From NCBI RefSeq assembly GCF_001194135.2, contig NC_069007.1, positions 1,662,126-1,726,125 on the forward strand: 64,000 bases of DNA, read 5' to 3'. The notes beneath the pieces were generated by a model that worked only from the letters and a program-made list of their open reading frames with translations, was not told the DNA's origin and did not search any database. Position numbers and translations under genes: made by a program. This DNA comes from Octopus bimaculoides. Lineage: Eukaryota. Below are positions 16,379 through 55,022 of the stretch, piece after piece; position 1 is the stretch's first letter, and each line of letters starts with the position of its first letter.

Positions 16379-16935
16379 CACTGCAACAAATTTCAGATAC
16401 AAAAAAAAAAGACAAGTTAAGAAAGACTTGTTTCTGGGTCAAAAAATTGTCCTGATTCTGATTTTTACCTTTATTTCTCCAGATTAAGCACTGTCTTCCT
16501 GTACCATGAACAATATGTTTTATAATATACTGCATAATATTGCGTATTGAACACAACATTGCAAATACTGAAAGTTACAAAAAACAAAATAAATATTTAG
16601 TTGGTATAACAAAACATATATTGGTTATGAATTAAAAACACACCTGTCAACTTAAACAACTTTTGTCCTTCTAAGCCACTAGTGCGGAGTGTGATCTTTT
16701 TTAAACCCCAGCAGTAGTCTGCCAACATACCAAGGTTCCATTTTCCTTTGAATCGTCGCTCCATCACTGAAATATCCTGATGGAATCTTTCACCATGTTC
16801 ATCACTCACATCACCAAGATTTTCCGCAAACAAATCCAAATGACAGTGAAGCACATGAACTTTTAGAGACCTGTTACATGCCATATCATGAAAATGACTC
16901 ATCAGCTTCAATTCACATCGCCTGCTTTTTGCCAT
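16379..16935 (-). mobile_element. 3' end of a Chapaev3-like (CMC superfamily) DNA transposon with C-terminal transposase relic
   Basis: ORF 16597-16935 contains ACNRSLKVHVLHCHLDLFAENLGDVSDEHGERFHQDISVMERRFKGKWNLGMLADYCW, the MSLKxHFLHSHLDFFPENLGxVSDEHGERFHQDI..ADYCW signature I associate with Chapaev3. A terminus TAA|CACTGCAACAAATTTC at 16376-16394 fits the CACTG TIR start and TWA target. Confidence 0.75.
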
Positions 16936-23327: not shown

Positions 23328-23622
23328 GCCACTTTGTCGCTTATAACGACGAGGGTTCCTGTTGAACCGATGAACGGAAGAGCCGACACATGATATTAAC
23401 ATACAAAAGACTGAGTGGTCCTTAAACCAGCGTACCATTTCTCCTAGTTCCCAGGGTAATTCAGCCTGGCACAAACTGTGAGAAGGCTGATAGTTTGAAA
23501 TACAGATACAACTCATTTTGCCCTCTGAGTCAACTGAAGCAACGTGAAATAAAGAGCCTTGCTTTAAAACACGACGCACCGCTGTGAATCGAACATTATG
23601 ATCGTGAGCCGGTTACCCTAAA

Positions 23623-23626
<4 letters not shown>
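23328..23626 (-). mobile_element. Decayed tRNA-headed SINE related to family C
   Basis: Shares the block GTTCC(T/A)GTTGA(A/T)CCGAT..ACGGAA...AAGGCTGA...TTTGAAATACAG with 29625-29995, with a head remnant at the right end. Confidence 0.65.
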
Positions 23627-23650
<24 letters not shown>

Positions 23651-23655
<5 letters not shown>

Positions 23656-23919
23656 AAATTAAGAGTAATGACCACCAAAAGTGGACTCCTATATGCTAGA
23701 AATAGATGCCAAATCACCTAACCACGAAGAGTTACAAGAATTTTTTCCTTGAGAAAATATTCTTCGTGGTTAGGTGATTTGGCATCTATTTCTAGCATAT
23801 AGGAGTCCACTTTTGGTGGTCATCCCTCTTAATTTTGTATGTAATATAATTTTAATCTTCGGATGTTTTTAAATATGCTAGGCCACTGGTTTTAATTGAT
23901 TAATATCAATTTCTACCCT
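23651..23919 (+). mobile_element. Asymmetric palindromic element, copy 1
   Basis: 80-bp arms (23651-23730 / 23761-23840; 2 mismatches, 63 bp contiguous perfect), 30-nt spacer, and a one-sided 79-bp tail ending in the hairpin AATTGAT-taat-ATCAATT plus TCTACCCT. Confidence 0.85.
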
Positions 23920-24355
23920 CATTATCAAGCTCAAGGTTGAATAAGCAAAAGCAGAGACCTGGTTTGTGGATATCCGTAATTGCATAATATTTTTATTTGT
24001 GTTGTTAAATGTTTTAATTCGGTCTGTTTTCCTCGCATACTGTTTTTCTCTGTTATATTGGTGCGCTACGGTGGATTATTTAAGACTTGGCTCTTATTTC
24101 TAGCAGGTAGATGCTCATTAAGCATCATTACGATATTTCATAGCTCGATAAAGCTATCTTAACTGCGTTCCACCAATGCTACTACTGGTGGTATCATCAA
24201 ATTATGAATTTATCCACAGATTATATGAACAGTAGTGACATCTAACTTCAAATCTCAGTGTTTGAATATTTCATTTAAATATATATATATATATATATAA
24301 TACAACTTATATAAGGGCATTACTATACAGTAATGCCTCACGCTTAGAGGGATTT

Positions 24356-34900: not shown

Positions 34901-35291
34901 TTATTGAATTTTTATTGAATTCAAGTTTTGTATCATTATGATCGTCTTGTTAATGACAGATCAACCATCGTTTTGTACGATCAGCTTTCGGTTTTTGAAC
35001 TACGTATACTTTTAATTCTTTTACTGAATTATTGAGCACATAGTTGAGTATACTGAAGACATGTGTAAAATTCACAGTAAAACTAAATGCATGTGACAAT
35101 AGACAGGATTTTCGTACTACAGGTAGGTTTCATCGGACAGTTTTACCCCATTCTTTCTATCTCTCCACATTTCCCAAATATAGGCGCAGGCTTCCGAAAC
35201 ACATAGATGTCTGTTTAGTGCCACTGCATGACTAATTGAGCAAGTGTCTTCTACTATAATGTTGGGGCGTCCAAAGCCTTTATATACACAC

Positions 35292-35560
35292 ACAAAAATA
35301 GGAGGAATGACCAGCAAAAGTGGACTCCTATATGCTAAAAATAGATGCCGAATCATCTAACCTCGAAAAATATGTTCTCAGTAAAAACTTAGCGACACGT
35401 ATTTTTCGTGGTTAGATGATTCGGCATCTATTTCTAGCAAAAAGGAGTCCACTTTTGCTGGTCATTCCTCTTATTTTTGTATGTAATATCATTTTAATCT
35501 TCGGATTTTTTTAATATGCTAGACAACTGGTTTTAATTGATTAATATCAATTTCTACCCT
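35292..35560 (+). mobile_element. Asymmetric palindromic element, copy 2
   Basis: 81-bp arms (35292-35372 / 35400-35480, 5 mismatches) plus the same one-sided tail as copy 1, ending ATCAATTTCTACCCT. Confidence 0.85.
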
Positions 35561-35561
35561 T

Positions 35562-35598
<37 letters not shown>

Positions 35599-35790
35599 TC
35601 TTTTATTCTCTTATTTCACCGCGGTCATGCTGGAACACCGCCTTTAGTTGCACAAATCTACCCCAGGACTTATTCTTTGTAGGCCTGGTACTTATTTTAT
35701 TGGTGTCTTTTGCCGGACCGCTAATTTACGGGGACGTAAACACAACGACATCGCTTGTCAAGCGATGGACAAACACAAACGCTCAAGCAT
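35599..35790 (-). mobile_element. 3' half of a family B SINE
   Basis: TTCTTTTATTCTCTTATTTCACCGCGGTCATGCTGGAACACCGCCTTT is the reverse complement of the family B tail, followed by the body block CCGCTAATTTACGGGGACGTAAAC. Confidence 0.75.
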
Positions 35791-53803: not shown

Positions 53804-53835
<32 letters not shown>

Positions 53836-53856
53836 GTATATATATATTTATATATA

Positions 53857-54112
53857 CAGGGTGATAAATTGAATATTAATTCAATTTAAAACCAAGTGGC
53901 CTAGCATATAAAATAATCTGAAAATTCAGAAAAAAATTGTATTACACGTATATAAGGGATGACCACTAGGTGGACATCCAATATGCTAGAAAGAGGTCAT
54001 CAACGACTCAACCACAAAGAAAAAAGATTTTTCTTTGTGGTTGGGTCGTTGATGACCTCTTTCTAGCATATTGGCTGTCTACCTAGTGGTTATCACTTAT
54101 ACACGTGTAATA
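53857..54112 (-). mobile_element. Asymmetric palindromic element, copy 3 (opposite orientation, diverged)
   Basis: Tail TA|CAGGGTGATAAATTGAATATTAATTCAATTT...GGCCTAGCATAT on the left, then 85-bp arms (53940-54024 / 54028-54112, 6 mismatches) with a 3-nt loop. Confidence 0.8.
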
Positions 54113-54165: not shown

Positions 54166-54282
54166 AGACCGCAAGCTGGCAGAAACGTTAGAACGCCGGG
54201 TGAAATGCTTAGTGGTATTTCGTCTGCCGTTATGTTCTGAGTTCAAATTCCGCCCAGGTCGACTTTGCCTTTCATCCTTCCG
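54166..54282 (+). mobile_element. 5' half of a family A SINE
   Basis: AAGCTGGCAGAAACGTTAGAACGCCGGG...GAGTTCAAATTCCGCCCAGGTCGACTTTGCCTTTCATCCTTCCG. Confidence 0.85.
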
Positions 54283-55022
54283 TAAGCAGCCTTTAATGCA
54301 CCAACCTAATGATCAGCATACTTCTCCAAGTCGCTTTGGACATAGATGAGGCGTAGAAGAAAGGAAGTATCTGGCCCAGGATAGGTTTGGTATCATGAAT
54401 ATGATATATACAAACACTGTACACGGAGCAGGATATGAAGGTTGTTTCTAACTCTTCATGTCGACTTTAAAGTCTGATCTAAGTGTCTTAACTTCTTTAT
54501 CATTTGTTGTGTTTCCTAAAGTGTATGTTGTATTAAAGCATAAGACGGTATATTATAATACGTATATTGTAACTTCGTTCGGTTTGTGCGAACCGCCAAA
54601 TTACGGGGGACGTAAATAAACAAATCGAGGTTGTCAAGCGTTGATGGGGAACAAATATATACGCAAAGCTACACGTGATTGGCTATGTCATGTCATGTCA
54701 ATCATCTGACTGGAATCCATATCAGAACACCGTTCTGTGGGTTAAGCTTGGTGAAACACGTATCTATTAACTTGGATTCCAATTTACCTCAACCCATACA
54801 TCATGGTGACTTCTATTACAGTAATATATATTCAGCGATAGCACGCCAAACGTCACACTTCGCCCAAATACACCGATTTAATTTGTTTCCCGATGAAACA
54901 GTTAATGACGTTATAAATAGGTACGACTTTTAGTCAAGTCTATTTACTGGTGTTAGCAGTGAAACTATCAGTGATTTCAGAACAAACAGTTCATTAGTTT
55001 TAGTAGTCATTTCTCACCCTAT

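What the first reader, a model, noticed from the sequence alone, without database searches (positions are those of the whole stretch)
23651..23919. Three-copy asymmetric palindromic element whose two arms change together (also 35292-35560 and 53857-54112)
Seen: each copy is an 80-85-bp-arm hairpin with a tail of about 80 bp on one side only; the other side abuts TA/CA-rich sequence at nearly the same point in all three. Between copies 1 and 2, five substitutions are mirrored in both arms (CACC>CAGC, GCCAA>GCCGA, TCACC>TCATC, GAAGA>GAAAA, AAATT>AAAAT). Copy 3 is far more diverged, yet its arms still pair at 79 of 85 positions. A small subterminal hairpin is also compensated: AATTGAT-taat-ATCAATT in copies 1 and 2, AAATTGAAT-atta-ATTCAATTT in copy 3. 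The motif ATATGCTAG occurs in both arms and in the tail. Inference: this is either a Tc1/mariner-type MITE (copy 3 begins TA|CAGGGTG) that repeatedly lacks one outer end, or an intrinsically one-ended element whose arm is copied by fold-back, or one using hairpin-dependent rolling-circle-like transposition. A plain MITE model explains the covariation but not the 3/3 asymmetry.
Basis: partly seen in the sequence, partly recalled or inferred. Interest (0 to 1): 0.75.

Follow-up and report, generated by a model that had tools for sequence, protein, structure and literature searches.

The report
One-tailed hairpin transposon family
These are three copies of a very abundant small non-coding mobile element, a long perfect hairpin with a short structured tail on one side, whose two arms have changed in lock-step; the pattern is real and says something about how the element copies itself, but it is a variant of known transposon types.

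Summary
Three copies have inverted arms of 83, 88 and 85 nt (96, 92 and 93% complementary) and a 76-83 nt tail on one side only. Arm differences between copies are mirrored at 5 (copies 1/2), 23 and 28 sites (copy 3 against 1 and 2).

Reads from public runs show a family of thousands to about 20,000 copies, shared by four related species. Fourteen of the 16 arm mismatches inside the window copies are private: the family's majority letter restores pairing, so each subfamily consensus is a perfect palindrome. Mirroring is therefore tied to amplification.

Most members have longer arms; the window copies are independent central deletions. Tail depth is roughly half the summed arm depth (0.28-0.9 by run), so one tail is the usual form, though this is not proven. 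Ends sit next to TA runs (P=1.6e-4). The tail diverges less than the arms and holds two small hairpins, both kept with changed sequence.

My best reading (0.4) is a non-autonomous element that amplifies through a self-folding single strand, with Helentron/HINE-like layout. A TA-targeting Tc1/mariner-type palindromic MITE carrying a captured tail is nearly as likely. No empty site or autonomous partner was found. RNA editing is not supported.

The parts
23626..23653 (.). (TA)14 run abutting the tail-less end of copy 1
   Evidence: TRF; family reads also run into (TA)n at this end (loose ends at 35281).
23648..23730 (+). Copy 1, far arm (the arm away from the tail). The palindrome begins TA|CAAAATT.
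23731..23760 (+). Copy 1, centre. It keeps part of the family's inner arm extension on the near-arm side only, so it is a remnant of a central deletion.
   Evidence: 26 of 31 positions match the reverse complement of the extension.
23761..23843 (+). Copy 1, near arm (next to the tail)
23844..23919 (+). Copy 1, tail. It holds small hairpin A (23854-23864), motif ATATGCTAG (23873-23881), hairpin B (23894-23911) and the end TCTACCCT.
   Evidence: About 80% of family depth stops at the homologous ...CTACCCT in copy 2.
35288..35398 (+). Copy 2, far arm. It pairs up to 35375; 35376-35398 is the inner arm extension kept on this side only.
   Evidence: 36 of 38 positions match the family extension.
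35397..35484 (+). Copy 2, near arm
35485..35560 (+). Copy 2, tail. It holds hairpin A (35496-35507), ATATGCTAG (35514-35522) and hairpin B (35535-35552), and ends CTACCCT.
35561..35600 (.). TATTAATAAATT followed by (TA)15, next to the tail end of copy 2. About 20% of family members share the first part.
   Evidence: Depth falls from 853k to 146k word depth across 35555-35578.
53819..53856 (.). TA-rich run abutting the tail end of copy 3 (TA|CAGGGTG)
53857..53939 (-). Copy 3, tail. It holds hairpin B (53866-53887), ATATGCTAG (53901-53909, - strand) and hairpin A (53917-53930).
53940..54024 (-). Copy 3, near arm
54028..54112 (-). Copy 3, far arm. The palindrome ends CACGTG|TA and is followed by AAATAAA(TA)4.

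Best explanation
The three loci are old, centrally deleted copies of a high-copy (10^3-10^4 or more), non-coding, mobile DNA family. Shown: the unit that amplifies is 5'-[far arm]-[centre]-[near arm]-[tail]-3'. The arms are perfectly complementary in the consensus of each subfamily. The single tail of about 80 nt is better conserved than the arms and holds two small stem-loops and a conserved ATATGCTAG motif. New copies land in or beside TA runs. After insertion the arms decay independently.

Inferred: because the source lineages stay perfect palindromes while their sequence drifts by about 30%, one arm must be corrected against, or resynthesised from, the other during amplification. The simplest way is an intermediate in which one strand folds on itself, such as single-stranded DNA, with mismatches in the stem repaired or copied across. 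The layout is an inverted repeat at the 5' end, its partner subterminal at the 3' end, then a spacer and a stem-loop 8 nt from the 3' end, with microsatellites alongside. This is the layout of non-autonomous Helentron/HLE2 rolling-circle elements (HINE, DINE-1). I therefore propose mobilisation in trans by a Rep/helicase-type enzyme. In that model the tail would be the recognised 3' end, and the long hairpin a structural element of the single-stranded intermediate.
For: Family size and spread: word depth in the tail is 0.69-0.90 million against 32-40 for single-copy flanks in run X1. Three other species give the same picture and the same majority letters, at 4-5% single-copy divergence.

Perfect-palindrome consensus: the majority letter restores pairing at 2 of 3, 6 of 7 and 6 of 6 mismatches in copies 1, 2 and 3. 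Mirrored differences number 5, 23 and 28. Copy 1's mirrored states are shared by 9-21% of family reads, so they mark a subfamily and are not private to the locus.

Tail conservation: the tail is 83% alike between subfamilies, against 55-68% for the arms. Both tail hairpins are kept with changed sequence.

One tail per element: the ratio of tail depth to summed arm depth is about 0.5 in most runs, and all 3 window copies have one tail.

HINE/HLE2 layout: taken from PMC4067079, PMC11417382 and PMC7492417. One published annotation counts 43,735 small 'RC/Helitron' copies in an octopus genome (PMC6279123). This bears on the case only if my guess of the organism is right.
Against: HLE2 inverted repeats are 11-18 nt, whereas these are 83-88 nt and longer in most family members. 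HLE2 elements insert between T and T, whereas these ends lie in TA runs. No autonomous partner, empty site or circle junction was found. The palindrome is bounded TA|CA...TG|TA, as in Tc1/mariner elements. Mirrored changes could arise by template switching during ordinary replication of a palindrome, with no special transposition intermediate. Tail:arm depth ratios range from 0.28 to 0.9, so the claim that one tail is the rule remains uncertain. Reads from the two arms cannot be placed unambiguously, so per-arm variant frequencies are approximate.
Confidence: 0.4

Rival explanations
1. A Tc1/mariner-type, TA-targeting palindromic MITE, bounded TA|CA...TG|TA. Early in its history it acquired the adjoining tail and now moves as palindrome plus tail, using a second end-like site at the tail end. 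The arms stay perfect through template switching or gene conversion in the palindrome during replication of the source copies.
For: The palindrome is bounded TA|CA...TG|TA in both subfamilies. Copy 3's tail end reads TA|CAGGGTG. The ends are enriched next to TA runs, P=1.6e-4. From my own knowledge, Sleeping Beauty-type transposases prefer ATATATAT targets. TcMar-Tc1 elements are reported as abundant in cephalopods (PMC8967140). The raw-read depth ratio of 0.28-0.48 leaves room for tail-less copies.
Against: The outer ends of the arm-to-tail unit are not inverted repeats of each other: tail versus arm alignment gives P=0.45 and 0.07. A passively captured tail should not be better conserved than the arms along its whole length, nor keep two hairpins. 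The main family's tail end lacks the CA terminus. Cut-and-paste transposition offers no reason for the mirroring to be tied to amplification.
Confidence: 0.3
2. The basic mobile unit is one-armed (arm plus tail), and the second arm is newly synthesised by fold-back copying at or around each transposition. This is a one-ended, rolling-hairpin-like mechanism and is the reader's second option.
For: Each subfamily consensus is a perfect palindrome despite about 30% drift. The position of the turn varies between copies, shown by 'opposite strands' joints at 35366-35370/35402-35406 and. The neighbouring repeat at 23925-24262 is one-armed and aligns weakly but collinearly with long arm plus tail (score 82 versus 51+-7 for shuffles).
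Against: The similarity to the one-armed repeat is weak: random window segments reach a score of 100. Simple fold-back of an arm-plus-tail strand would copy the tail too and give two tails. No one-armed member of the family itself was seen.
Confidence: 0.15
3. An ordinary two-tailed long-TIR MITE that has lost one tail independently at these three loci, for example by recombination or expansion in the TA-rich arm/tail junction.
For: The start of the tail (TATGTAATATAAT) is itself a degenerate TA run. Unitig depth in run X1 gives a tail:arm ratio of up to 0.9.
Against: All 3 copies lack the same tail at the same point, in two subfamilies. Most runs give a ratio near 0.5 and raw reads give 0.28-0.48. 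Many family contigs end at the arm end and run into (TA)n.
Confidence: 0.1
4. A retroposed, SINE-like element or a host hairpin-RNA (miRNA/siRNA) gene family whose stem is kept by selection on RNA structure.
For: The family is transcribed at a low level on both strands. Some members end in TTTT followed by a TA run.
Against: The window has no tRNA-like head and no Rfam family. Depth shows no gradient of the kind 5' truncation would produce. Selection cannot hold 85 consecutive pairs perfect. RNA reads show no editing signature.
Confidence: 0.05

Closest known systems
HINE / DINE-1: non-autonomous Helentrons (HLE2 rolling-circle elements)
   Same: Both are non-coding and high in copy number. 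Both have an inverted repeat at the 5' end whose partner is subterminal at the 3' end, followed by a spacer and a short stem-loop near the 3' end. Both are associated with microsatellites, and their ends are asymmetric (PMC4067079, PMC11417382, PMC7492417).
   Different: The inverted repeats here are 83-88 nt or more, not 11-18 nt, and fill almost the whole element. The flanks are TA runs, not T-T. The microsatellite lies outside the hairpin, not inside. No Rep/helicase partner is known.
Palindromic Tc1/mariner MITEs (Stowaway-like; human MADE1, from my own knowledge)
   Same: Both are short, non-coding and almost wholly palindromic. The palindrome here is bounded TA|CA...TG|TA, and the target is TA-rich.
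   Different: This unit carries a conserved, structured 80-nt tail on one side, so its two outer ends are not inverted repeats. The arms drift fast yet stay perfectly paired.
Foldback (FB) elements of Drosophila and relatives
   Same: Both have long inverted arms that evolve in concert, variable centres and a tendency to central deletion.
   Different: FB arms are built of tandem subrepeats and are much longer. No tandem subrepeats occur here, and FB elements have no one-sided tail.
Canonical Helitrons (HLE1)
   Same: Both have a short hairpin about 11 nt upstream of a CTAG. Here this arrangement occurs inside the tail and inside the far arm. The A|T-rich target is also shared.
   Different: The unit does not start with TC or end with CTRR, and the family sequence continues well past the CTAG.

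Membership tests
HLE2 / Helentron non-autonomous (HINE) | Inverted repeat at the 5' end with its partner subterminal at the 3' end | tested here: met
   The far arm starts at the element's end. The near arm ends 76-83 nt before the other end.
HLE2 / Helentron non-autonomous (HINE) | Short palindrome (stem-loop) downstream of the right repeat, 8-35 bp from the 3' end | tested here: met
   Hairpin B has a 7-9 bp stem and a 4-nt loop, lies 8 nt from ...CCCT, and is compensated between subfamilies.
HLE2 / Helentron non-autonomous (HINE) | Inverted repeats are short (11-18 nt) | tested here: not met
   They are 83-88 nt in the window copies and longer in most members.
HLE2 / Helentron non-autonomous (HINE) | Insertion between T and T, with no target-site duplication | tested here: inconclusive
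   The flanks are TA runs. About 20% of members end AAATTTT. No empty site was recovered.
HLE2 / Helentron non-autonomous (HINE) | An autonomous Rep/helicase element shares the termini | not testable with these tools
   The genome cannot be searched here. Nothing of this kind is in the window.
Tc1/mariner MITE | TA target-site duplication | tested here: inconclusive
   TA flanks the palindrome on both sides, but TA is also part of the palindrome and of the surrounding TA runs. Copy 1's tail end is followed by CATTATC.
Tc1/mariner MITE | Terminal inverted repeats at the two outer ends of the mobile unit | tested here: not met
   The arm end and the tail end are not significantly alike. The feature is met only if the palindrome alone is taken as the unit.
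Tc1/mariner MITE | A DDE transposase partner shares the ends | not testable with these tools
   No genome search is available.
Canonical Helitron (HLE1) | 5' TC and 3' CTRR ends, with a hairpin about 11 bp from the 3' end | tested here: not met
   The ends are CAAAAAT... and ...CTACCCT. The hairpin-11 nt-CTAG arrangement is internal only.
Foldback elements | Long arms made of tandem subrepeats | tested here: not met
   TRF finds only the flanking microsatellites.
SINE / retroposon | Pol III promoter head (tRNA, 7SL or 5S), 3' tail, and 5'-truncated copies | tested here: not met
   No tRNA-like sequence or Rfam hit was found. Depth is flat from arms to tail.

The most novel reading that the evidence does not exclude
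The element is mobilised by a mechanism in which only the tail end is specifically recognised and the second arm is rebuilt from the first at every round, by fold-back or rolling-hairpin copying of a single strand. That would be a mode of transposition not described for animal elements. It would explain in one step the perfect-palindrome consensuses, the fast drift of the arms and the single tail.
Probability: 0.15. Interest if true: 0.85.

Novelty: new variant of a known kind. Interest (0 to 1): 0.5.

Why it matters
Non-coding palindromic elements are usually filed as MITEs and assumed to move by cut and paste. In this family two subfamilies about 30-45% apart in their arms each keep a perfect palindrome. 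Resting copies decay arm by arm, and a single structured tail is the best-conserved part. This is sequence-level evidence that the hairpin is re-made or proof-read during amplification. It therefore offers a way to test for single-strand (rolling-circle or fold-back) transposition in an animal with a very repeat-rich genome.

With thousands of copies beside TA microsatellites, the family is also a likely source of long double-stranded RNA, of palindrome-driven breakage and of assembly gaps.

Tried and rejected
1. A palindrome seen after the arm end and the tail end in runs X21-23 (A+GGTTCGTCCATCGATCGATGGACGAACC+T) first looked like a common target or partner element. It is absent from the window. 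It also appears at arbitrary places in an unrelated repeat in the same runs. I take it to be a T-overhang linker of that library. No paper holds the sequence.

2. A-to-I editing: the RNA-enriched T>C sites at 35336 and 35358 pair with A>G at 35436 and 35414, so they are mirrored genomic variants. Copy 3 showed no skew.

3. Fetching more genomic copies failed in several ways.
   - Peptides read through the element found nothing in the protein collection.
   - Exact-pattern scans of metagenome and prokaryote genome contigs found nothing.
   - Contigs reached through a transposon-relic ORF at 16597-16935 came from other organisms.
   - No PacBio runs were listed.

4. Orthologous empty sites: contigs of species B and C reach 35282 and then stop aligning, with 59-62 unaligned letters that the tool does not show. 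The copy 1 locus is too repetitive to follow.

5. The tail as a degenerate third copy of the arm: the similarity is not significant.

6. Rfam, tRNA and Pfam scans gave no hits.

7. Raw-read depth implies only hundreds to about 1,200 copies if the genome is about 2.7 Gb. I discounted this. Three copies in 60 kb would then be wildly improbable, and that library looks depleted for this AT-rich family relative to the SINEs.

Full report
**What is there**

The window is eukaryotic DNA, with N gaps, tRNA-derived SINEs and a very high load of microsatellites. There are 133 TA runs of 8 nt or more, covering 4% of the bases. From my own recognition of the SINE sequences I think it comes from an octopus. 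The organism is coded in the tools and I did not test this.

- The inverted arms are 83, 88 and 85 nt long and 96, 92 and 93% complementary.
- A tail of 76-83 nt lies on one side only.
- Copy 3 lies on the opposite strand.
- The window holds no further copy or fragment.
- As single strands, copies 1 and 3 fold at -96 and -90 kcal/mol, with z-scores of -22.

**Covariation**

I aligned the six arms, each near arm reverse-complemented.
- The two arms of one copy are 92-96% alike.
- Arms of copy 3 are only 55-68% like those of copies 1 and 2.
- Copies 1 and 2 differ at 5 mirrored sites. Copy 3 differs from them at 23 and 28 mirrored sites, against 8-13 columns of any other kind.

The tail is 83% alike between copy 3 and copy 1, so it diverges less than the arms. 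Both small hairpins of the tail are kept with changed sequence: AATTGAT/ATCAATT versus AAATTGAAT/ATTCAATTT, and AATC-TTCG-GATT versus CTGAA..TTCAG. The 9-mer ATATGCTAG occurs seven times in the window, only in these copies (0.75 expected), in the order + - + along the element.

**The family**

I laid public reads and contigs on the copies at 80% likeness.
- In run X1 the single-copy flanks have a word depth of 32-40, while the tail has 0.69-0.90 million and the arms 0.1-1.0 million. That implies about 2x10^4 copies.
- Raw reads of runs X21-23 give far less. Those libraries look depleted for this AT-rich family relative to the neighbouring SINE, and three copies in 60 kb fit the higher figure.
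- Three other species hold the family with the same majority letters and at similar relative depth. Their single-copy DNA differs from the window by 4-5%.

**Private versus inherited changes**

Of the 16 arm mismatches inside the three copies, the majority letter in family reads restores the pair at 14.
- Copy 1: 2 of 3 (23666 T>G, 23824 C>T).
- Copy 2: 6 of 7 (35291, 35301, 35338, 35363, 35440, 35442).
- Copy 3: 6 of 6 (53950, 54008, 54075, 54080, 54091, 54095).

So the consensus of the main family and that of the copy-3 subfamily are both perfect palindromes, and the mismatches arose after insertion. Conversely, the mirrored states that set copy 1 apart are shared by 9-21% of family reads, so they mark a subfamily. 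RNA reads reveal further mirrored pairs at 35336/35436 and 35358/35414.

Mirroring therefore happens in the lineages that amplify, while resting copies decay arm by arm. One caveat applies: short reads cannot always be assigned to the right arm, so per-arm frequencies are approximate.

**Longer form**

At 35398, 64-72% of the DNA reads leave copy 2 and continue AACAGACTGTAAAAGGGCAAGAC(A/G)AATGAA.... The same stretch is also seen inverted. Most members therefore have arms of about 150 nt or more.

Copy 2 keeps the start of this extension on the far-arm side only, and copy 1 keeps it on the near-arm side only. Reads show the hairpin turn at various positions ('opposite strands' joints). The window copies are thus independent central deletions, as expected for long palindromes.

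**One tail or two**

Tail depth divided by the summed depth of both arms should be 0.5 for one tail and 1.0 for two.

| Run | Ratio |
|---|---|
| X2 | 0.4-0.55 |
| X14 | 0.5-0.7 |
| X18 | 0.52 |
| X19 | 0.65 |
| X1 | 0.66-0.9 |
| Raw reads X21-23 | 0.28-0.48 |

Tails of diverged subfamilies probably cross-map better than their arms do, which inflates the contig figures. Many contigs end at the arm end and run into (TA)n. Together with 3 of 3 copies in the window, one tail is most likely the usual form, but this is not proven.

**Ends and target**

About 80% of the family depth stops at ...CTACCCT. About 20% shares a further YATTAATAAATTTT. At the other end the majority sequence is (TA)n directly followed by CAAAAATAAGAGG. 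The palindrome itself reads TA|CA...TG|TA in both subfamilies. Four of the six ends lie within 12 nt of a TA run (P=1.6e-4).

I could not obtain an empty site, so whether a TA is duplicated on insertion remains unknown.

**Interpretation**

Selection cannot hold 85 consecutive pairs perfect while a third of the positions change. One arm must be corrected against, or copied from, the other, and this happens in the amplifying lineages. The better-conserved, structured tail looks like the part that is specifically recognised.

The layout matches non-autonomous Helentron/HLE2 elements (PMC4067079, PMC11417382, PMC7492417). It has a repeat at the 5' end, its partner subterminal at the 3' end, then a spacer and a stem-loop 8 nt from the end, with microsatellites alongside. 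These elements move through single-stranded DNA, which would let the arms pair and be repaired. That is my preferred reading (0.4).

It fails two defining features of HLE2: the repeats are not short, and the target is not shown to be T-T. I therefore say it works like an HLE2 element and do not file it as a member.

The near rival (0.3) is a TA-targeting Tc1/mariner-type palindromic MITE that captured the tail and keeps its arms perfect by template switching in the palindrome. A fold-back, one-ended mechanism (0.15) is the most novel reading that the evidence leaves open.

**Dead ends and artefacts**

The palindrome GGTTCGTCCATCGATCGATGGACGAACC seen after the element ends in runs X21-23 is a library linker. 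Editing is not supported. Several routes to more genomic copies failed.

Noticed in passing
Not in the window; runs X21-X23 laid on 35255-35585 and 23925-24262: Many reads of these 'GENOMIC OTHER' libraries carry A+GGTTCGTCCATCGATCGATGGACGAACC+T at fragment ends, both on the hairpin family and on an unrelated repeat. This looks like a self-complementary T-overhang bridge linker of a proximity-ligation library. It could be mistaken for a genomic palindrome.
   Followed up: yes
window 23925-24262: A repeat of about 10^3 copies lies next to the tail of copy 1. It is not palindromic. It aligns weakly but collinearly with 'long near arm plus tail' of the hairpin family: score 82, against 51+-7 for dinucleotide shuffles and a maximum of 100 for random window segments. 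It may be a distant one-armed relative.
   Followed up: partly
window 23450-23625 (-), 35207-35280 (+), 35601-35770 (-), 54166-54300 (+): Each hairpin copy lies within about 50 nt of a very high-copy SINE, with tRNA-like heads in two cases, and is separated from it by a TA/CA microsatellite. TA runs seem to be shared landing sites for several repeat families.
   Followed up: partly
window 16597-16935 (-): A 112-aa ORF (..NLGDVSDEHGERFHQDISVMERRFKGKW..MLADYCW) is a relic of a protein found in many eukaryotic contigs at 60-90% identity. One relative is annotated with a Tc1-like transposase domain. The ORF has no Pfam hit of its own.
   Followed up: partly
whole window: The microsatellite load is extreme: 133 TA runs of 8 nt or more (4% of bases) and 121 dinucleotide repeats of 12 nt or more. 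Thirteen N gaps mostly sit beside such runs.
   Followed up: partly
window 23671-23699, 23854-23881 and homologous places in copies 2 and 3: Both the far arm and the tail carry a small hairpin, then 11-12 nt, then CTAG (within ATATGCTAG), all on the same strand. This arrangement is typical of the 3' end of a canonical Helitron, but here it is internal. It may be coincidence or a trace of ancestry.
   Followed up: no
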